Assembly: GCF_001194135.2 (NCBI RefSeq)
Contig: NC_069001.1
Coordinates: 11,936,687-12,000,686 of the forward strand
DNA from: Octopus bimaculoides
Taxonomy: Eukaryota
Direction: 5' to 3'
Length of the DNA stretch: 64,000 nucleotides
Shown here: positions 13,999 to 41,810 of the stretch, piece after piece
How positions within the stretch are numbered: position 1 is the first letter of the stretch
Layout: each line of letters begins with the position of its first letter
Program-made: the position numbers and the translations under genes
Notes under the pieces: generated by a model
What the model was told of the DNA's origin: nothing
What the model saw: only the letters and a program-made list of their open reading frames with translations
Database searches by the model: none

Positions 13999-14180
13999 GA
14001 ACAGAAAGGGTGCCGAAAAAAAGCCGGGGTACGAAAGATCAGCTCTTAATTGATGATCTAATTATGAAGAACTGCAAGTGAAGACAGAGAAACCTGAGCA
14101 TGGCACGGGTTGACTATCGTAATGCATATGATATGATACCACACTCCTGGTTAATCAGAGCAATGGAAATGTATTCTGTT
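13999..14180 (+). mobile_element. R4/Dong RT fragment (N-terminal RT motifs)
   Basis: [58 protein letters not shown]; matches the EQKGC..[22 protein letters not shown] signature. Confidence 0.9.
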
Positions 14181-14722
14181 GTTATTCCATGGTGTTGGCA
14201 TTATTTCCCAACTCTGTCTTGTATGTCAATATATACCTTCTTAGCCAAGACTGGGCAGCCAGAGACAATATAGTTTCTGATTTCTTGTCCATCTCCACGT
14301 ATTCTGCAGTTACTACTTGTGATGGTTCTTTTCATTATATGCTTTTGGTAATTTCTGGTGGGAAGGCTTTGGTGTTGTACTGCAATTAAAAGTCCTTCAG
14401 TCTCTGCTTTAAATCCTGAGCTTCTCAGCCATTGTAGGGATTTTGCTTTGTCTATTTATTTCGCGCATAATTTAACTCAGTATTTGCCATCGTTTTATCA
14501 TTAACCTTTGCTGTCCCAGTTTTAGTTTGCCTTGCATCTGTTTTGCAGCTTTTGTTGTTTCTTCTTTTTCTTCATCGTTGTTAGGTACTATGACTTCTTT
14601 TTTATATTTGTCAGATTCCCTGAAGACTGAAAACAGTTTTTTTGGTTTTGTTCATGCTTTGTGGCTATCTGTGTTAGTTTTCCTTGCTTCTGAAGTAGGT
14701 ATCTTTGCAACCCTATGGTGGT
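14181..14722 (-). mobile_element. R4/Dong post-RT region with degenerate CCHC zinc knuckle
   Basis: Minus strand TTIGLQRYLLQKQGKL..KSLQWLRSSGFKAETEGLLIAVQHQSLPTRNYQKHI..CRIRGDGQEIRNYIVSGCPVLAKKVYIDIQDRVG. Confidence 0.85.
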
Positions 14723-15427: not shown

Positions 15428-15972
15428 CAGGGTGTCCCAAAACTAAAGCAATCATATTGCTATATTTCTAACCGAGCGTTGCAATGCCTTGATAAAAGAG
15501 ACACAGTCAAGATACTACCACATTTATTCGATATCATCACGTATGTTTCAAATCACATTGTTAAGTCTTCGTGCAAATGCTTCACACGCGGCACGCAGCT
15601 GTTCTTGCGGAATCGAAGCCCATTTCTGGTGCAGTTGTGGTTTCAGTACGTCGAGCAAGGCATGAGCAATTTTTGAGAACCTCGTCTTCAAAATGGACAA
15701 AACAGAAAATTCCAACGCGTTCAGATCGGGGTTTCTTGAGATCTATACATCCTTGACTATCAACGACGGAATATTTTTCCGAATCCAGTGTTGTGTCTGT
15801 TTGGAAGCTCAACGTTGCGCTTTGAAAGTGGTCATTTGCCTATGGAAGCAGTTCATCTTCCAGAATCTCGCTAATGTACCGCTAGGTGTTAATGTGAATA
15901 CCAGATGGTACAAAATCGAACTAAGACCTTTCAGTGAGTATCACAGCCGCCCAAATCTTAACTGACTGTGGA
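15428..15972 (-). mobile_element. Tc1/mariner (maT/DD37D-like) transposase 3' half with one TIR
   Basis: Minus strand PQSVKIWAAV..DFVPSGIHINT*RYISEILEDELLP*..SFQTD..NPDLNALEFSVLSILK..KWASIPQEQLRAACEAFARRL. Terminus TA|CAGGGTGTCCCAAAA at 15426-15442. Confidence 0.85.
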
Positions 15973-16916
15973 TTTTGACGTCTACTCACTGTAGACTTGT
16001 AGCCTACACTCTAGACTTGTAGCCTACACTCTAAAGTCAATCATTCTGGTGGTTTATCGCTTGTGTGATGTCAAATTTCTTTTCATTTTTTACGATAGAC
16101 AAAGTAGATACTGAAGGAAAAGTAGCCCATGCAGGTATGAACCGTTTAATGAAACTATTGTTCTCTTAATTGTTCATATTAGCATCATATTTGATTCCAG
16201 ATGTATTTGTTTAGTTGTTTCTTTCAGGGTCTTTCTGTTTGTCTCAGAGTTGACGTGCTAAATTCATTTCTAAACGATAGAAGTATTATGTGTATAGAAA
16301 TGTTCTCTTTTTTAATACCTGCTATAAAAATAGTGAAGCTTTTATTTCAACTGTGATTTATGTCAACATTCATTTTACTAACAATACAATGCTGTATATA
16401 GCACACATTCAGATAATCACTTCAGCAAATCTGGAAAATTCTAGCAATATAGAGATTTTAAGAGCATCGAGGATTACACAATTCAATATTTTTCTTCCAT
16501 GCTTTGGATCTTTCCATTATTATTCTTATTGTTCTGAGAGCAATAAATCCTAAACGTTAACTCTTTTTGTAGTTAATGAGTTATTATATTAATAAATTCA
16601 ACAATTAATGCATTTCCCATCAGACGATAAGAAAGATATATATGGAAACACATCATTAATATTCCAGAGCGTTCATTTCAATAATTTCTAAATAATTTTA
16701 TGAGCCCATGAAATCATTTCATCAGTAAGAGTTAATCCAAATTAATCCAGTTATACGGATCGTTGTAATTGGTTAAGCGTAAGTTTGGGAACATTCGTTT
16801 TTAACGCGGCATAAATATGGAGTTGTAATGCTACTGGTAACGTGCCGTGCATTTAAAGCAAGTCATAGATTATGCATTCATACATGCATTCACACATACA
16901 TATATACATATGTATG

Positions 16917-16950
<34 letters not shown>

Positions 16951-17180
16951 TGTATGTATGTATGTATGTATAGTTATCGCCAAGCAAACATGGCAGTCCT
17001 AAAAATACGACNNNNNNNNNNAGTTATCGCCAAGCAAACATGGCAGTCCTAAAAATACGACGAATGCAGCCGTTGATTAGCTCCAAGAGGCCATCGCCTC
17101 TAGCTAGCCATGTGACACACGAACCTGTGTCCATTATAACTTTCGATCAGGGGAGGTCAGCCGCTTCCCCATGCTGGTCT

Positions 17181-17232
17181 GGCATCTACAGACTAGTTTC
17201 GGGGTATTGCCCCTTGTCAATGTAAAGCAGCC
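17181..17232 (-). ncRNA. Minimal type I hammerhead ribozyme motif, copy A (U3-A8 core variant)
   Basis: Minus strand: stem I UUUACA, core UUGACAA, stem II GGGG-CAAUA-CCCC, GAAA, palindromic stem III (A)CUAG(U), cleavage triplet GUC, stem I partner UGUAGA. Confidence 0.75.
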
Positions 17233-17288
17233 GAATTTAGGTAAATAATCCTTCGTACAAACGCTCCCTAGCAACGCCTGCTGGGTTC

Positions 17289-17340
17289 GGCTGCTCTACA
17301 TCGATAAGAGGCAATACCTCGAAACTAGTCTGTAGATGCC
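17289..17340 (+). ncRNA. Minimal type I hammerhead ribozyme motif, copy B (U3-A8 plus U4C core variant)
   Basis: Stem I UCUACA 17295-17300, core UCGAUAA 17301-17307, stem II GAGG-CAAUA-CCUC 17308-17320, GAAA, CUAG, UC 17329-17330, stem I partner UGUAGA 17331-17336. Confidence 0.7.
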
Positions 17341-17501
17341 AGACCAGCATGGGGAAGTGGCTGACATGGTTCTGGATTTAATCCCACTGCGAAATCCCTC
17401 TCGCCTAATATATCATGTCCTTTCTTTTCCAATTGTACTGTGTAGTCTGATGACAACACCGCGAACTAACGTAAATATTCATCTGAAAAAATTTGTCAAT
17501 A

Positions 17502-17772
17502 CAGTAATCCTCGCCATATCGCGGTTCACCTATCATGGTTCACCTATCATGCTTCACCTATCGTGGTTCACCTATCGCGGTATATTATTTACTTGTATAT
17601 AGTTGTATATTATTTAAGCTTACGTCGATTCCTCGGTGCTGTTGTTTTGCATTTATAATAAAAGAAATACAAATTATAAAAATTATTTTAAAAAATTATT
17701 TTTCTACTTCGCGAATTTTTACCTATCGTAGCGTTTCCGAACATAACACTCGCGATAGTCGAGGGATTACTA
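17502..17772. mobile_element. pogo/Tigger-like MITE with TIRs and TA flanks
   Basis: Left TA|CAGTAATCCTCG, right CGAGGGATTACTA|TA. Internal 14-bp unit GGTTCACCTATCAT x4 at 17523-17578. Confidence 0.8.
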
Positions 17773-18134
17773 TATATATATTTTTTCAAAATTTAAATCC
17801 ATGTATTCTATTGTATCATAAAAGCATGTTCTAACGACATACATAGTATAAACATTAATCCTCGACAAAACGAGTTGTCAATGATCGCAGTAAATGCTAC
17901 ATAAAGACACGTTATCCGAACTAAGTTTTTAATCTATAAATATAAAACTAACATGTACTTCATAATTAAATTATGCTCTACAGTTGTTTGAATTTTATAA
18001 TCATCATGATTTTTGTATTGGTGTAATTTGCTTACATCACTGATAAAAGCGATGTGTTAACCATTTGGGTTTAGAAATTTGTGCTAACCATACCGTCGAA
18101 ATATAACATAATCAAGTACCAATTACTGATTAAA

Positions 18135-18220
18135 TTGCAAATAATGTACACTTCTATTACTTTATGTTCGTCATAATTTGCAAATAATTTACACTCCTAT
18201 TACTTTATCTTAGTCATAAT
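18135..18220. repeat. 43-bp imperfect tandem duplication (2 copies)
   Basis: TTGCAAATAATGTACACTTCTATTACTTTATGTTCGTCATAAT followed by a copy with 4 substitutions. Confidence 0.85.
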
Positions 18221-18861
18221 TTTAACATAGCTCTATCGAATATTACTCGACTTGCCACTACTTCTAACCGGTAACAATTTGTGAATGGTTTTTTTTTTTG
18301 AAAAACCGTTTCTTTAGTATGTAATAATGATACAAATTACAAGAATTACTAATTGGTAAAATGGAATCAAAACTTAAAAGATTTTCAAGATTTTTAAAAG
18401 GTTCATTTAGATATAGACGTGCAGACATGTATACATTTACAAAAATGTTTTTGAAAGTATATTAATAAGCTACGTGATGGCGTGTACACTGTTATTTCAA
18501 AGAGGAAGTCGTATGAACATTTTATGTTCAAATAAAAAAAAACATCGTTAGTGGCTATACGCATTACTTTTTAATGTAGACTGACAAATATAGCTTTAGG
18601 ATTGACAGGAATATTTTTCTATGGTCTTTAAATGTCAAATATGATTCACGTTACATTGAAAATTGTACACTGATAAGAAACATTAAATTCGGTACCGTTT
18701 CAGTTGTTTCAAAACGTGATTAAGATTGTGCTTGTTAGAATTGCTTGTTAGTGTTGGTAACACTGTCTATGTATAAAGATAAACACACGCACATACACAT
18801 ATATATATATATAATCTTTATCTACACAACCAACATTTCTGTGCTTTTTCACCTTAAATCG

Positions 18862-18990
18862 GCAAAGTAGACCGATAGTGTAAATCCTAGGCTTACGAAG
18901 TATGAGTCCTGGAGGTCAATTTGCTCGACTAAAAGCAGTATTCCAGCATGGCCGCAGTCAAATGACTAAAGCAAGTAAAAGAGACTAAAA
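18862..18990 (+). mobile_element. Octopus SINE 3' half
   Basis: GACCGATAG...GTCAATTTGCTCGACTAAAAG...CCAGCATGGCCGCAGTCAAATGACTAAAGCAAGTAAAAGAG. Confidence 0.8.
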
Positions 18991-19435
18991 TAGAGGCAAG
19001 TCGAATAATATTCGATAGAGCTCTGTGAAAATTACGACGAACATAAAATAATAGAAGTGTTCATTATTATGTATTAAAATATTAATAGATGTATTCGTTA
19101 GCAATTTAATCTGTAATTGTTACTTGATAACCTTATATATCGACGTTATAATTAACACATCACTTTTATCTCTTATTTAAGCAAATTACACCAATACAAA
19201 AATCATGATGATTATAAAATTCAAACAACTGTAGAGCATAATTTAATTATGAAGTACATGTTAGATATATATTTATAGATTATAAACTTAGTTAGGATGA
19301 CGTGGTTTTACGTAGAATTTACCGCGATAATTGACAACTCGTTTTGTTGAGGATTAATGTTTATACTTTGTATGTCGTTAGAGCATGCTTTTATGATACA
19401 ATAGAATACATAGATTTAAATTTTGAAAAAAAAAA

Positions 19436-19558
19436 TATAGACTAATCCCTCGACTATCGCGGGTGGTACGCTCCAAAACCCCGCGATAGGTGAAAATCCG
19501 CGAAGTAGAAAAATAATTTTTAAAAATTATTTTTATAATTTATATTTCTTTTATTATT
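19436..19558. mobile_element. Truncated second copy of the pogo/Tigger-like MITE, inverted relative to 17655-17774
   Basis: TAATCCCTCGACTATCGCG...GCGATAGGTGAAAATCCGCGAAGTAGAAAAATAATTTTTT aligns to the reverse complement of the right end of the first MITE. Confidence 0.8.
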
Positions 19559-19647
19559 TTTTCAAAACACCACCATCGAGGGCCAATCTTTGCACGAATT
19601 TTTACTCGAAACATAACTAAGTTATACTCATATATACATACATATCT

Positions 19648-19924: not shown

Positions 19925-20592
19925 TCCTTAAATGATTATATGACCTGTATTAGACCTGTATCTCCCAATCTACACATCCTCGCAGACAAAACAAATAATA
20001 TTTACGAAACCAACATTTCCATACGCTCAAGACTCCTCGCAACACCATCACTAAAACATACAAAAGAACCTGTAATTCCAGAAACAATGATAAATACATA
20101 AGCAAAGAGCTGGTTACCTGTCTTAAGATACAGGATCACGTGGACCTTCTCGCCACGCGAACTCCCTCTCACACCGATATTATACTTAAGGAACATTAGC
20201 CTAATTTCAACCCTTTCAAAAGTGAAATAGGTATGATTAGCAAGTGTATTCTCGGTACTATCAACTCTGACATCAGACAGGCTACAGGGTTGAGTCAATG
20301 GCACTCTAGCACGGTATCGAGAATAAATCATCCTGCAAATTCATCCAGTTCGACATTGTTGACTTCTAGCCTTCCACATCTAAACCCCTCTTCCTGAAGG
20401 CCCTAGTTTTTTGCTGGACAATTTACCAGAATTAGTGATCTTTATGTCAGAATTATCATGAACACCAGACAGTCAATTCTGGTCCATTACGATTCCTTCC
20501 GGGTGAAGAGAGAAGGCAATCCAATGAATCATGTCTCTATAGGGAATTTTGAAGGGACTGAAATGGCCGGTCTAGTCCGGTTATACATATAT
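19925..20592 (+). mobile_element. Penelope-like element RT fragment (N-terminal RT motifs)
   Basis: LADKTNNIYE..ILKEH*PNFNPFKSEIGMISKCILGTINSDIRQATGLSQW..CKFIQFDIVDF*PS..IIMNTRQSIL..VSIGNFEGTEMAGLVRLYI; resembles the PLE FDIVDFYPSI and MGSYDGAEVCELVGLYI motifs. Confidence 0.85.
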
Positions 20593-20774
20593 AGAGGTCG
20601 GTCTTCTATAGAGACGGCGGCCTGGCTATCTCAAGCCATATGATAGTTCACCTTGGTAGACATCCCTTCACCACCACTCAGCTAGGCCATGTTCCGTGGA
20701 CCGTGCCTCCGTTCTTTCCCCCCGCAGCAGCCCCACCGTTACCCGTCTCCCGTTGTTCAAGAGGATATTGAACT

Positions 20775-20885
20775 CTTCCAGAGTATTTAGAGATTCTGTC
20801 CAGATTATGAAACAATCGTCAAGGTATCTCTTACATGCTTTTTCGATATAATTTCTAAATCCAGTGCTATCGTTTTCCTCTACTT
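20775..20885 (-). mobile_element. Penelope-like RT catalytic-motif fragment
   Basis: Minus strand GFRNYIEKACKRYLDDCFIIWDRISK (RYLDDCFIIW). Confidence 0.7.
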
Positions 20886-20989
20886 ATTGGCAGATTTCCC
20901 ATTAGATATCTCATTATATATAGATATCCCATTATATTAGATATCCCATTAGACATCCCATTATATATGTAGATATGCCATTATATATA

Positions 20990-38379: not shown

Positions 38380-39790
38380 AATATGGCACTCACACATCCT
38401 TGAGCTTGCCACTCTTATTGGCACCAGACTTCTCGCTCTGGCTTGTCTCTGGATAATGTCAATATAGTGGAGAGTGTCTATGAGGTGTCGTGCAAGCCTA
38501 GTTGGACCTAAAACTCTGGACAGACATTGTTGACCTCTGCGCGATATGTGCTGCTTTTTTTCCCTGTATATACTTATTTTATTTTTATTAGGAAGACCTG
38601 CGGCGATGGGAGATCGGCCAAGTATGCGGACCTGACGGTTTGGAAGTATGTAGTCAGCGACCTGCACGTAGGCTGCCCATGCCAGATATGAAGTAATCTC
38701 CTTGTCGCCCAAGACAAGGATAGGTTTCGATAATGCATGGGTGTCTGAGCAGCTCCATTTGCAGGGGGGACTGCGTGGAATTTAAGCAGTACATTGTGGG
38801 CATGGCACTTTACAATCAATAGTCACTGAACTTCAGCAACGTTTTCATCAAACGATTCTTTATTCTTTGTGTGTGGCAGTAGCATATCCCAGTGTTTCAG
38901 GTGCACTTTGAAGAACCTGGTCTCGAAAATCTTCCCATACCGTAGTATTTTCGATGCTGGACAAGCGAGTCTGAGGCGTTTCCCTCAACAAGGTATCATA
39001 TATTTTGTGGTCATTCAGACGCTGAGGAATGCCCACTGGCCCTCTGCACTTTTTCACTCTAATCATCATCCGAAACTTTGCTCCCACCAGACTGTGGTCT
39101 GTCCAGCATTCCGATCCATAAAAGGACTTGACATTAGAAATGTCATAAATGGTACGCTTGCGGATAATGACATAATCCAGCAAGTGCCTAACTTTAGATC
39201 TTGAAGGTATCCGTTGTTGCGTGATCACTTTCGTGCATAAAATCAGTGCTTGCGATGTAATGTCCATGTTAAATGCTAAGCTCCAGCGGCATGAGATCAT
39301 TGCTATTCATTTTCCCTACACTAAAACGTCTTAGAAAATTCCATGTTTGCATTGAAATCCCCCAGTAGAAATATTTAACAGAATTGGGGATTTCCCTAAG
39401 TATGGCTCTCAGCTGGGTATAAAAGATTGTTTTATCCTCATCACAACTAGTCAAGGTAGGTGCATAGGCACATATTAGAGTAGCAAACTGCCCACATTTC
39501 ATGTGCAATCGTAGAGCCATTAGACGTTTATTTATAGGAACAGGAAGCTCCTCCAACTTCTTAAGGATATCAGATAGAACTGCAAATCCAACATCAGCCT
39601 CTCTACGCTCCTCCTTCAGCCTCCCCTTCCAAAAAGGTGTATCCACCTCCTACTTTCTCAAACTCACCATTACCTTCTATACGAGTCTCTGAAAGTGTAG
39701 CTACATCAATGTTATAGCGGTTCAGCTCGCGAGCAACAAGTGCAGTGCGTCTTTCAGGCCTGAAATGGTTCGAGTTCCATCCAGATTTTG
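38380..39790 (-). mobile_element. RTE-clade LINE: APE endonuclease joined to the ORF C-terminus, RT core deleted
   Basis: RPERRTALVARELNRYNIDVATLSETR, FWKGR..DVGFAV, ICAYAPTL, LLDYVII, CWTDHSLV (APE motifs); ESFDENVAEVQ linker; then LAWAAYVQVADYILP and a decayed terminal zinc-finger-like segment. Confidence 0.85.
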
Positions 39791-40509
39791 TAAAACAAAC
39801 TCTCATTGTTTTTCGAGCGCAGGGTGGACATCTGTCAGTCACGCTAAACAGACCAGATATAGAAAGACAGGCAATTTTTGGTTCACCTTTTCTAGAAAAC
39901 AGAACAATGAAAACGTAAATATGGTATTACCATAGTATGGAACTGGAAAAGGTTTTATCAAAATCGATTCACAGAAAAACAAGAAATCATAAATTTCACT
40001 CCTAAGCTATTAGCGTAGTTCTGCGTGTATATGTATGCATGTTGATAGATAGATATACATATATATATATATATATATATAAGAGATTGAACAGACAGAG
40101 CACAAGCAGAAAAGTTTGACGAAAGCAAAGCAAACGAGAAACTAGACGAAAAGTTAACGGACGGGGAATATAGACAAAGGCATGATACACGGAATATTCC
40201 CAGCTGAGTTTTCCCCATCAGTCAATGAACCAAAATATCGTCGTGGTTTTGCACCATTATAATTGAGACAACTCAATCTTGTATGTGCCGTTATTAAACT
40301 ACTGGGGAAAAGCTAGTGAATGTATTCTAAAGACAGAAATAAACAAGTCTATATATAAATACAACAGACCGAAGAATTATGCATATATAACAATGTGAAG
40401 CCTTATGGCTAGATACAACGAAAGTAAGAAATAATAATAATTATATAAATACCACATACATATATATATATATGTGTGTGTGTGCGTATATATATATATA
40501 TACATACGA

Positions 40510-41810
40510 CAAAATAGAGTGAAAAAACTATAGAAGGCTTGTCTTATATGGTTAAAGAATATATTTAAATCGTTATGTTACAAAAATATTATGAAATTTT
40601 GCGTATAGTAACATTGTTTTTGGAGAAATAACCGGTTTCGTATTTTCTTTTCAAAGTTCTCAAATTTCTTTATCTATATTGTCATGTTTTCGCTATGTTG
40701 TGAAATTTGTAGTTCCAGAGAGGGGAAGGCAAACAGAGATTTTACGGTCAAAGGGAGATAATCAAACATTTTGGGAATGACTAGGTTTTATTAATTTAAC
40801 ATGATTTGGTTTAGAAGGAATAGAATGTTACAAGTGGCTAGGTTTTTGCTATATATTTTTTTTCAATGAGGTGAGTTTCCTTATTTAAAAATGCTATAAA
40901 TGGTTAAATGTTGGCTTATATTTTTCGATGAAATAGGTTTCCTTATTTAATCTAAGTTGTGTTGGTGTTCCAGTGGCACATTGATAAAATGGAAGATTAT
41001 TAATTGTGCTTTGCGCATTTCTCAATATATTCACTAAAGGGAGTCATTTTGTATTCCAGGAATGCAATCTGCTGTCGGTGCAGAGTGCATCTGCGTCTGA
41101 GCGTGGACCCTATGTGGTTTTGGTGGTAACCTGAACATCTTATAACATAAATCAGGTTTCCTGAAGCATAAGTAAAGTCAGATTTGATTGTCAGATTTGA
41201 TTTTGAATGTTTGCCCCTCTTTGAAAAGGAATTCTGATCCTTCTAGAAGGTTTGGGCATGTTGCGCAGTTTGGTCGACCACATGTTTCCACTTTTGCGTC
41301 CGTTATTTTAGAAAATAATTTTGCCTTTCTGAGGATCTTTTGTAGTGATTTCGGTTGTTTGTGGCTTTTAATGATTTTTTTTTGTGTGTGTAAAATTTCC
41401 TTTAATTTTGGGTCCTTATGTAGCATTGGAAAATTTTGGGTGATGATGGTGAAGGCTTCTTTGTTTCTGGGGTTGTATGTGGATATGCACGGCAGTATTT
41501 TCGGGGAAGGTGTGTTGCTGTGTTGAACTTTTCTTAAAGTTTCTATGTCGATTTGCGTTGCACGTCTGATTCCATCCTCTATGAGTTGAACTGGGTAGTG
41601 TCTGTCAATTAGGGTGTTTTTGAGTTCTTGCAGTCTAAACTTTCTGGTATTTTTTTCTGACACTATTGTGCATATCCTTCTTGCAAAGCTGAAGGTTATG
41701 TTTTAAATATATTCTTTAACCGTATAGCACAAGCCTTCTGTAGTTTTTTCACTCTATTTTGGCTTTTATACAACCAACCACGTCCTTTCACGTACCAACT
41801 CTCTCACCTA
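40510..41810 (-). mobile_element. 5'-truncated Penelope-like element with 3' pLTR and inverted pLTR segment at the 5' junction
   Basis: ORF remnant 41700-40895: NITFSFARRICTIVSEK..LPCISTYNPR..CGRPNCATCPNL..NLIYVI..TLRRRCTLHRQQI..RLNKETYFIEKYKPTFN*. 40510-40569 matches the reverse complement of 41702-41761 at 56 of 60 positions. Confidence 0.85.

What the first reader, a model, noticed from the sequence alone, without database searches (positions are those of the whole stretch)
17181..17340. Back-to-back pair of minimal hammerhead ribozymes with a U3-A8 variant core and a compensatory stem II change
Seen in sequence: copy B (+, 17289-17340) reads UCUACA / UCGAUAA / GAGG-CAAUA-CCUC / GAAA-CUAG-UC / UGUAGA. 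Copy A (-, 17232-17181) reads UUUACA / UUGACAA / GGGG-CAAUA-CCCC / GAAA-CUAG-UC / UGUAGA. All stems pair. Between the copies stem II swaps G-C for A-U, and stem I swaps G-C for G-U. Established knowledge: the hammerhead core is C3UGANG8A...GAAA...UH; C3-G8 is a tertiary pair that the U3-A8 double change can rescue; minimal type I hammerheads with a short palindromic stem III occur in Penelope-like terminal repeats and are thought to cleave as dimers. Inference: this is a PLE- or retrozyme-like family whose ribozyme uses U3-A8 and would be missed by CUGANGA searches. Predicted cuts are 17330|17331 (+) and 17191|17190 (-). Copy A keeps U4 and is the better candidate for activity. I cannot tell whether this family is already described.
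Basis: partly seen in the sequence, partly recalled or inferred. Interest (0 to 1): 0.85.

Follow-up and report, generated by a model that had tools for sequence, protein, structure and literature searches.

The report
Inverted Penelope-type hammerhead ribozyme remnants
Two mirror-image 80-base copies of the tail end of a Penelope-type retrotransposon each carry a small self-cutting RNA motif with a rare core variant that was already published, so this is an ordinary transposon relic and not a new kind of ribozyme.

Summary
The motif is real. Two 42-nt type I hammerhead-like sequences sit at 17295-17336 (+) and 17226-17185 (-). Each has a 6-bp helix I, a 4-bp helix II with a CAAUA loop, a 1-bp helix III with the palindromic loop CUAG, and a U3/A8 core. 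A relaxed descriptor finds nothing else like them in the window, in 150 shuffles or in 40 Mb of simulated sequence.

The two copies are not independent. They are the arms of one inverted repeat (17156-17235 / 17286-17365, 80 nt, 93% identical, 50-nt spacer). This repeat is a 51% GC island in about 31% GC DNA, with both 3' ends facing outward.

That head-to-head layout of 5'-truncated copies is the published signature of Penelope-like element (PLE) insertions. The same window holds a second example at 40.5-41.8 kb. That one is a PLE reverse transcriptase/endonuclease remnant with an inverted 60-nt copy of its own 3' end. About 225 nt past its stop codon it has another U3/A8 hammerhead-like motif.

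U3-A8 PLE hammerheads and opposite-strand pairs were described in 2014 (PMC4209133). Copy B has C4 and is probably dead. A read-through transcript would fold into an 80-bp hairpin. The compensatory helix II change is weak evidence (p about 0.02-0.05). No other family member could be retrieved, so the family consensus remains untested.

The parts
17156..17235 (-). Left arm of the inverted repeat. It is an 80-nt 3'-terminal fragment of the element in minus orientation, with its 3' end at 17156.
   Evidence: the repeat finder I1/I2: 80 nt, 93% complementary to 17286-17365. GC is 54% against about 31% in the flanks.
17185..17226 (-). Hammerhead copy A: helix I UUUACA/UGUAGA (one U.G pair), core U3 U4 G5 A6 C7 A8 A9, helix II GGGG/CCCC with loop CAAUA, G12AAA, loop 3 CUAG, U16.1, C17. 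Predicted cut at 17191|17190.
   Evidence: Sequence; descriptor hit; fold with MFE -9.2 kcal/mol, z -1.6.
17156..17184 (-). 29-nt 3' tail after helix I of copy A (UGCCAGACCAGCAUGGGGAAGCGGCUGAC). Its last 10 nt can pair with the 10 nt just 5' of the hammerhead.
   Evidence: Identical in both arms except one CpG transition. The outer 10-bp stem appears in the 80-nt MFE, z -3.2. 371 of 20000 shuffles reach this run length.
17236..17285 (.). 50-nt spacer between the arms. It is not palindromic and is 48% GC, so it is probably the extra 5' sequence of the longer of the two truncated copies.
   Evidence: Spacer against its own reverse complement scores no better than shuffles. GC content.
17286..17365 (+). 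Right arm of the inverted repeat. It is an 80-nt 3'-terminal fragment in plus orientation, with its 3' end at 17365.
17295..17336 (+). Hammerhead copy B: helix I UCUACA/UGUAGA, core U3 C4 G5 A6 U7 A8 A9 (U4 replaced by C, creating a CpG), helix II GAGG/CCUC, loop CAAUA, GAAA, CUAG, UC. Predicted cut at 17330|17331.
   Evidence: Sequence; descriptor hit; fold. The B+B cofold forms an intermolecular ACUAGU helix III.
40624..40669 (-). Independent PLE-linked hammerhead-like motif: AGAAAU/UUGAGAA/17 nt A-rich with no helix II left/GAAA/CCGG/UU/AUUUCU. It also has U3/A8.
   Evidence: Besides copy A, it is the only hit of the descriptor without a helix II requirement; 0.003 hits are expected per window. 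It lies about 225 nt 3' of the PLE stop codon, on the same strand.
40894..41747 (-). 5'-truncated PLE ORF remnant (thumb, CxxC linker and GIY-YIG endonuclease; about residues 460-744 of 744-aa relatives).
   Evidence: phmmer gave 719 hits, with best E 2e-41. tblastn of 150 PLE proteins. Relatives carry RVT_1 and GIY-YIG domains.
41702..41761 (+). Inverted 60-nt copy of that PLE's own 3' terminus (40510-40569), abutting its 5' truncation point. It has the same head-to-head geometry as the repeat at 17.2 kb.
   Evidence: blastn: 60 nt at 93% identity in inverted orientation. Sequences read.
20743..20898 (-). Short PLE reverse-transcriptase fragment (motif 5, RYLDDCFIIW), 3.4 kb from the repeat and not contiguous with it.
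   Evidence: Pfam RVT_1 at E 0.008 for one ORF segment. tblastn hits of about 30 PLE proteins.

Best explanation
The 210-bp locus is a dead, head-to-head doublet of two extremely 5'-truncated copies of the 3' end of a hammerhead-bearing Penelope-like element, or of a short non-autonomous element (retrozyme-like) that PLE enzymes mobilise.

**How it arose (inferred from published PLE biology).** The GIY-YIG endonuclease nicks both target strands. Reverse transcription is primed from both nicks, each starting near the RNA 3' end. The two short cDNAs meet head to head. This leaves a minus copy on the left and a plus copy on the right, with both element 3' ends at the outer borders.

**What each copy carries (shown).** Each copy has the element's type I hammerhead and a 29-nt tail.

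**What the hammerhead would do in the parent element (established knowledge).** In the parent transcript the hammerhead would act as a dimer. The palindrome A15.1-CUAG-U16.1 of two hammerheads pairs into a 6-bp helix III, and each cuts after C17.

**The core variant.** The C3-G8 tertiary pair is replaced by U3-A8, a natural covariation already reported in PLE hammerheads.

**At this locus.** The ribozymes are most likely inert (inferred). They lie on opposite strands. Copy B has lost U4. Any read-through transcript folds into an 80-bp hairpin instead of a hammerhead.
For: **The motif is genuine.**
- It is far above chance.
- G5, A6, A9, G12-A14, A15.1-U16.1, C17 and G10.1-C11.1 are intact in both copies.

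**The repeat looks like an insertion.**
- One inverted repeat with sharp borders and outward-facing 3' ends.
- A 51% GC island in about 31% GC DNA, spacer included.

**The geometry matches PLEs.**
- Published PLE architecture includes an inverted 5'-truncated copy abutting the 5' end, hammerheads near the 3' end and a 30-40 bp tail (PMC8557442).
- The PLE protein cleaves and extends both strands, and reverse transcription starts a short way 3' of the hammerhead (PMC11167929).
- A precedent sits in the same window. The PLE remnant at 40510-41747(-) has an inverted 60-nt copy of its 3' end at 41702-41761. No obvious duplication was seen on reading its flanks.

**PLE hammerheads of this type occur where expected.**
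- The motif at 40669-40624(-) is about 225 nt after the stop codon.
- The relative L003 has canonical min-hammerheads in both flanking repeats, the 3' one 288 nt after the stop.
- The relative L002 has CGCUAA/CUGACGA/.../GAAA/CCGG/UU/UUAGCG about 275 nt after the endonuclease C-terminus.

**U3-A8 is a recurrent paired change.**
- It occurs at two independent loci in the window. No C3-G8 or mixed 3:8 candidate was found.
- L002 and the window PLE share CCGG/UU but differ as C3-G8 against U3-A8, with fully covarying helix I.
- It is published for S. mansoni.

**Dimer potential.** B+B cofolding gives an intermolecular ACUAGU helix III.
Against: - No PLE coding sequence adjoins the repeat. The nearest fragments are 3.4 and 23 kb away.
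- No other copy of this 80-nt sequence was found in the window. None was found in viral, metagenome or prokaryote-genome collections, or among predicted proteins. The parent family is therefore unidentified.
- There is no target-site duplication.
- Helix dimensions of 6 bp / 4 bp fit the 'canonical metazoan type I' retrozyme hammerhead. They fit less well the PLE 'min-HHR' with a 6-8 bp bulged helix II. The parent may therefore be a non-autonomous element and not an autonomous PLE.
- There is no Rfam hit.
- Catalysis is untested.
Confidence: 0.7

Rival explanations
1. U3/A8 is not the family's core but private decay. The parent family has canonical C3-G8, and the source copy had picked up two AT-biased transitions (C to T, G to A) before it was duplicated.
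For: - The genome is about 30-34% GC.
- All six differences between the arms are transitions, and two are at CpG sites.
- The other U3/A8 motif, at 40.6 kb, has an A-rich helix II that no longer pairs, so it has clearly decayed.
- Its relative L002 has C3-G8.
- Both arms descend from one event, so their shared U3/A8 counts only once.
Against: - Both partners of the 3:8 pair changed while the other eleven conserved core positions, G10.1-C11.1 and all helices stayed intact in copy A.
- A second independent locus shows the same paired change, and no locus shows a half change.
- U3-A8 is a documented natural PLE variant with about 1,300 instances in one genome.
Confidence: 0.3
2. The locus is a remnant of a tandem non-LTR retrozyme array. 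The inversion arose from a replication or repair-based inverted duplication and not from PLE twin priming.
For: Hammerhead dimensions (helix I 6 bp, helix II 4 bp, helix III 1 bp plus a palindromic tetraloop) match the canonical metazoan retrozyme type, for example axolotl HHR_Amex1 and the general description.
Against: - There is no tandem repeat of 150-450 bp and no second unit in the window.
- The arms end only 35 nt past the cut site, at identical outer borders, as expected for reverse transcription from a fixed 3' start.
- A 2026 preprint argues that animal retrozymes are PLE derivatives anyway, so this rival overlaps the main explanation.
Confidence: 0.15
3. The inverted repeat is a functional locus in its own right. 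For example, it could be a hairpin RNA or small-RNA precursor, or a pair of active ribozymes that trim divergent transcripts.
For: A plus-strand transcript folds into a near-perfect 80-bp hairpin of -167 kcal/mol. Five of the six arm differences are compatible with the hammerhead fold.
Against: - No conservation or expression data could be obtained.
- Copy B carries C4 at a position that is invariant in active hammerheads (established knowledge).
- There is no Rfam match.
- A 7.5% divergence between the arms fits neutral ageing. Random transitions break no hammerhead pair 46% of the time.
Confidence: 0.05
4. A chance hammerhead-like string sits inside an unrelated inverted repeat or MITE.
For: The descriptor was relaxed at positions 3, 4 and 8. 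The first-stage scan looked at many windows.
Against: - 0 hits in 150 shuffles and 0 hits in 40 Mb of simulated sequence.
- The loop 3 palindrome, G10.1-C11.1 and the placement near an element 3' end all match known PLE hammerheads.
- PLE remnants with the same motif type lie in the same window.
Confidence: 0.03

Closest known systems
Minimal hammerhead ribozymes in the pseudo-LTRs of Penelope-like elements, including the U3-A8 variant of Schistosoma mansoni Cercyon PLEs (Cervera & de la Pena 2014, PMC4209133)
   Same: - Type I topology.
- A palindromic helix III/loop 3 that allows dimer formation.
- A conserved G10.1-C11.1 pair.
- A U3-A8 core covariation.
- Frequent occurrence as solo motifs, or as two motifs 100-700 bp apart on opposite strands, attributed to truncated PLEs.
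   Different: - Here helix II is 4 bp without the unpaired base after A9, and helix I is 6 bp. The published min-HHR has a 6-8 bp bulged helix II and a 4-5 bp helix I.
- The two motifs here are only about 70 nt apart.
- The host genome is unidentified but is probably not Schistosoma. No canonical hammerhead reached the Rfam gathering score anywhere in the window; that Sm-alpha hammerheads would be expected in a Schistosoma window is my own knowledge, not tested here.
Canonical metazoan type I hammerheads of non-LTR retrozymes or satellite repeats (for example newt/axolotl HHR_Amex1; Cervera & de la Pena 2020, PMC7229834)
   Same: Helix I of 6 bp, helix II of 4 bp, and helix III of a single base pair capped by a palindromic tetraloop. 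These hammerheads are poorly active as monomers and active as dimers.
   Different: - There is no head-to-tail tandem array here.
- The core is U3/A8 instead of C3/G8.
- Loop 1/loop 2 tertiary contacts cannot be assessed.
- Retrozyme monomers are 150-450 bp, whereas only 80-130 nt survive here.
Complex head-to-head PLE insertions (an inverted 5'-truncated copy next to the main copy, plus a 30-40 bp tail; Craig et al. 2021, PMC8557442; Mob DNA 2024, PMC11167929)
   Same: Two inverted copies share the same 3' terminus at the outer borders. The truncation is variable. A short tail follows the hammerhead. A (TATG)n microsatellite lies about 185 bp away. A second example lies in the same window at 40.5-41.8 kb.
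   Different: Both copies are truncated to 130 nt or less, so no coding part survives to prove the PLE origin.

Membership tests
Hammerhead ribozyme (type I) | Conserved core C3 U4 G5 A6 N7 G8 A9 ... G12 A13 A14 ... A15.1-U16.1, H17 | tested here: inconclusive
   Copy A keeps every position except C3/G8, which are replaced together by U3/A8, a Watson-Crick-compatible swap published as a natural variant. Copy B additionally has C4 in place of the invariant U4.
Hammerhead ribozyme (type I) | Three helices around the core, open helix I, and a G10.1-C11.1 closing pair | tested here: met
   Helix I is 6 bp, helix II is 4 bp starting with G10.1-C11.1, and helix III is A15.1-U16.1 plus loop CUAG.
Hammerhead ribozyme (type I) | Match to the curated covariance models (Rfam clan CL00010) | tested here: not met
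   No hit at gathering score or at E<=10 on 241 nt. The control canonical PLE hammerhead in L003 reaches only 19.9 bits against a 52-bit gathering score, so the test has low power for this class.
Hammerhead ribozyme (type I) | Mg2+-dependent self-cleavage 3' of position 17 | not testable with these tools
   This needs in vitro transcription of monomer and dimer constructs.
PLE pseudo-LTR hammerhead / PLE insertion | Lies in a repeat flanking an RT plus GIY-YIG ORF | tested here: not met
   No PLE coding similarity lies within 3 kb (Pfam scan of 82 ORF segments; tblastn with 150 PLE proteins). This is expected if both copies are truncated to 130 nt or less, but the defining linkage is not shown.
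PLE pseudo-LTR hammerhead / PLE insertion | Palindromic helix III/loop 3 allowing a double hammerhead | tested here: met
   ACUAGU is self-complementary. The B+B cofold forms it between molecules.
PLE pseudo-LTR hammerhead / PLE insertion | Head-to-head inverted 5'-truncated copies sharing the element's 3' terminus | tested here: met
   Arms 17156-17235(-) and 17286-17365(+) have outward 3' ends. The same geometry is seen at the bona fide PLE remnant 40510-41761.
PLE pseudo-LTR hammerhead / PLE insertion | min-HHR proportions (helix II 6-8 bp with an unpaired base after A9, helix I 4-5 bp) | tested here: not met
   Helix II is 4 bp with no bulge and helix I is 6 bp. These are the 'canonical metazoan' proportions.
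Metazoan non-LTR retrozyme | Head-to-tail tandem repeats of 150-450 bp, each with one type I hammerhead | tested here: not met
   There is no direct repeat of the unit and no further copy in the 64 kb.
Metazoan non-LTR retrozyme | Expression as linear and circular monomer RNAs | not testable with these tools
   No transcriptome of the source organism was available.

The most novel reading that the evidence does not exclude
This unidentified, AT-rich, microsatellite-laden animal genome may carry PLE or retrozyme lineages whose working hammerhead consensus is U3-A8 in a canonical-size (6/4/1 bp) type I scaffold. In that case CUGANGA-based censuses and Rfam would systematically undercount its ribozymes, and the C3-G8 to U3-A8 switch would have arisen repeatedly within PLEs. 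Two unrelated U3/A8 motifs in one window, and a C3-G8 relative in L002, point that way.
Probability: 0.35. Interest if true: 0.35.

Novelty: new member of a known kind. Interest (0 to 1): 0.2.

Why it matters
The finding matters only modestly. It adds an example of the natural U3-A8 hammerhead core outside the flatworm in which it was first reported, this time in a canonical-size scaffold. It also shows that standard covariance models miss both this variant and ordinary PLE hammerheads. For annotation, the locus should be masked as a PLE-type retroelement fragment. It does not open a new question, because the variant core, the dimer architecture and the opposite-strand pairs are all in the 2014-2024 literature.

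Tried and rejected
**Searches for other family members. All were empty.**
- blastn of 17050-17450 against the window.
- Exact-pattern scans of viral contigs, metagenome contigs twice and prokaryote genome contigs.
- A chimeric protein query made of the three open frames of both arms.
- A full-text search of papers for sequence strings, which returned only unrelated primers.

**Organism identification failed.**
- The exact-protein look-up of the PLE ORF is not on record.
- The word-indexed search with it found nothing.
- A LINE fragment gave four unnamed hits.

**Other attempts that led nowhere.**
I replaced it with 82 stop-free segments.
- The search for extension of the inverted repeat, a target-site duplication and a palindromic spacer was negative.
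- A MAFFT alignment of the five hammerheads misaligned the helix II region. I did not run a formal pair count and compared the motifs by hand.
- PLE loci L004-L009 had 3' flanks that were too short or held no motif.

**Rejected reading.** The Rfam 'miRNA' hits at 16868-16990 are low-complexity matches to the (TATG)n microsatellite.

Full report
**What is in the sequence**

The window is a draft eukaryotic assembly. It has 18 runs of N, about 34% GC and dense microsatellites.

- Copy B occupies 17295-17336 on the plus strand.
- Copy A occupies 17226-17185 on the minus strand.

Each 42-mer reads: helix I (6 bp), Y-Y-G-A-N-A-A, helix II (4 bp, loop CAAUA), GAAA, CUAG, U, C, helix I.

Against the hammerhead consensus, G5, A6, A9, G12-A14, A15.1-U16.1, C17 and G10.1-C11.1 are intact in both copies. 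C3/G8 is U3/A8 in both. Copy B has C4 where U4 is invariant.

**Is it more than chance?**

Yes. My own descriptor allowed Y3, Y4, R8, helix II of 3 bp or more, helix I of 5 bp or more and a palindromic loop 3. It hits only these two sites on both strands of the 64 kb. It hit nothing in 150 dinucleotide-preserving shuffles and nothing in 40 Mb of Markov sequence.

Folding energies alone are unremarkable, with z about -1.6. This is normal for hammerheads with a one-pair helix III.

Rfam finds nothing. As a control, a textbook C3-G8 PLE hammerhead in locus L003 gets only 19.9 bits against a gathering score of 52. The Rfam negative therefore says little.

**The two copies are one event**

The repeat finder shows that the copies are the arms of a single inverted repeat. 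The arms are 17156-17235 and 17286-17365, 80 nt each and 93% complementary, with a 50-nt spacer.
- The repeat does not extend further.
- The spacer is not palindromic.
- There is no target-site duplication.
- The whole 210 bp is 51% GC in about 31% GC surroundings, as expected for inserted foreign sequence.
- In hammerhead sense, both copies point outward. Each ends 35 nt past its cut site at the same terminal sequence, ...GGCUGAC.

The six differences between the arms are all transitions, and two are at CpG sites. They fall as follows.
- One pair of differences is the G-C/A-U swap in helix II.
- One is U.G/C-G in helix I.
- One is at the free position N7.
- One is in the tail.
- One is U4/C4.

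Under random transitions, a doubly hit base pair is expected in 2% (helix II only) to 5% (any helix) of trials. No pair is broken in 46% of trials. The 'compensatory change' is therefore suggestive but weak, and it is a single observation.

**Context: Penelope-like elements in the same window**

A phmmer search of 1.8 billion representative proteins with the ORF at 41178-41663(-) gave 719 hits. They include 740-760-aa proteins with DKGG, RFLDDCF and GIY-YIG motifs that carry RVT_1 and GIY-YIG Pfam hits.

tblastn of 150 of these proteins against the window maps two PLE remnants.
- 40894-41747(-) is the C-terminal third of the ORF.
- 20743-20898(-) is a fragment around RT motif 5.

Neither remnant touches the repeat at 17.2 kb. 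A Pfam scan of 82 stop-free segments between 10.4 and 24 kb found nothing else.

About 225 nt downstream of the 41-kb ORF's stop codon, on the same strand, lies AGAAAU/UUGAGAA/17 nt/GAAA/CCGG/UU/AUUUCU (40669-40624). Its helix II no longer pairs. With a descriptor that ignores helix II, this site and copy A are the only hits in the window, against 0.003 expected. With any Y3/R8 combination allowed, there are three hits against 0.055 expected, and all three are U3/A8.

Related PLEs fetched from public contigs carry hammerheads at the same relative place.
- L003 has CUGAAGA...GAAA-GCGC-UU in both flanking repeats, the 3' one 288 nt after the stop.
- L002 is the closest relative of the window's element in the endonuclease region. 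It has CGCUAA/CUGACGA/.../GAAA/CCGG/UU/UUAGCG.

L002 and the window motif share loop 3 (CCGG) and U17. They differ as C3-G8 against U3-A8, and their helix I sequences are entirely different yet fully paired.

**The architecture has a precedent 23 kb away**

The 41-kb remnant is flanked at its 5' truncation point by an inverted 60-nt copy of its own 3' terminus: 41702-41761 against 40510-40569, at 93% identity.

The order is: minus copy on the left, plus fragment on the right, with both 3' ends outward. The repeat at 17.2 kb has the same geometry.

The literature describes this layout for PLEs.
- 5'-truncated copies often have an inverted 5'-truncated copy abutting them, a 30-40 bp tail and hammerheads near the 3' ends (PMC8557442).
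- A purified PLE protein nicks and extends both DNA strands and starts reverse transcription internally, a short way 3' of the hammerhead (PMC11167929).

**Most likely explanation (confidence about 0.7)**

The locus is a twin-primed, doubly 5'-truncated insertion. It derives from the 3' end of a hammerhead-bearing PLE, or from a short element that PLE enzymes mobilise.

- **Shown:** the motif, the inverted repeat, its composition, and PLE remnants with the same geometry and the same core variant.
- **Inferred:** the integration mechanism and the identity of the parent.

**How the ribozyme would work**

In the parent RNA, the hammerhead would work as the published double hammerhead. ACUAGU pairs between two copies; the cofold of two copy B molecules shows this helix. 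Cleavage follows C17.

At this locus the two motifs can never be in sense on one RNA. A read-through transcript forms a hairpin of -167 kcal/mol. Copy B lacks U4. The locus itself is therefore probably inert.

**What remains open**

I could not retrieve any other member of this 80-nt family. I also could not identify the organism. Three points therefore remain untested:
- whether U3/A8 is the family consensus (my estimate is about 0.65) or private to the source copy;
- whether the parent is an autonomous PLE or a retrozyme-like derivative;
- whether the RNA cleaves.

The helix proportions (6/4/1 bp plus a tetraloop) fit the 'canonical metazoan' retrozyme hammerhead better than the PLE 'min-HHR'. 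A 2026 preprint argues that these retrozymes are PLE derivatives.

**Comparison with the known, and verdict**

U3-A8 PLE hammerheads (about 1,300 in S. mansoni) and pairs of hammerheads 100-700 bp apart on opposite strands were reported in 2014 (PMC4209133). Dimeric action of hammerheads with palindromic helix III is long established.

This is a new member of a known kind, and it is a relic. I score its interest as low (0.2).

Noticed in passing
window 40510-41761: A PLE remnant on the minus strand (ORF part 40894-41747) has an inverted 60-nt copy of its own 3' end at 41702-41761. A U3/A8 hammerhead-like motif with a decayed helix II lies at 40669-40624. The element's 3' end abuts a (TA)n/(TG)n microsatellite at about 40460-40505.
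   Followed up: yes
L002 1231-1269 compared with window 40669-40624: Two related PLE hammerheads share loop 3 CCGG and U17. They differ as C3-G8 (L002) against U3-A8 (window). All six helix I pairs differ in sequence yet remain paired, which is a between-element covariation of the 3:8 pair.
   Followed up: partly
window 16972-17061: A 10-N gap (17012-17021) is flanked by a perfect 40-bp direct duplication (16972-17011 = 17022-17061). This looks like a scaffolding or gap-closing artefact and lies 95 bp left of the inverted repeat.
   Followed up: no
window 17631-18263 and 18988-19581: A large inverted repeat has arms of about 600 nt at 80-90% identity and a spacer of about 720 nt. It starts 265 bp to the right of the hammerhead repeat and ends at a (TG)n/(TA)n microsatellite. 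No hammerhead motif is detectable in it. The 14-bp tandem array at 17517-17586 (TATCGCGGTTCACC) is the reverse complement of a motif inside its arms. The element type is unknown.
   Followed up: partly
window 17156-17235 (and 17286-17365): Within each arm, the first 10 nt (UCGGCUGCUU) can pair with the last 10 nt (AAGCGGCUGA), enclosing the hammerhead. The 80-nt fold of copy A has z -3.2, and 1.9% of shuffles reach this run length. An AUG in a strong Kozak-like context (CCAGCAUGG) sits in the tail, which recalls PLEs whose ORF starts at the hammerhead. The significance of both features is unknown.
   Followed up: partly
window 20743-20898 (-): An isolated PLE reverse-transcriptase motif 5 fragment (RYLDDCFIIW...). 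A possible continuation (FTFE...LMFL) lies at 20005-20340(-), separated from it by about 330 bp.
   Followed up: partly
window 14082-14455, 15551-15742, 38860-39842: Other transposon debris: LINE-type RT fragments on both strands at 14.1-14.5 kb, a possible transposase C-terminal fragment at 15.55-15.74 kb(-), and an AP-endonuclease (RTE/CFDP2-like) fragment with frameshifts at 38.9-39.8 kb(-). The types were assigned by eye from motifs. Pfam gave no significant hit.
   Followed up: no
window 16868-16990: Dozens of sub-threshold Rfam 'microRNA' matches (mir-3149, mir-1277 and others) all fall on the (TATG)n/(TATA)n microsatellite. They are low-complexity artefacts.
   Followed up: yes
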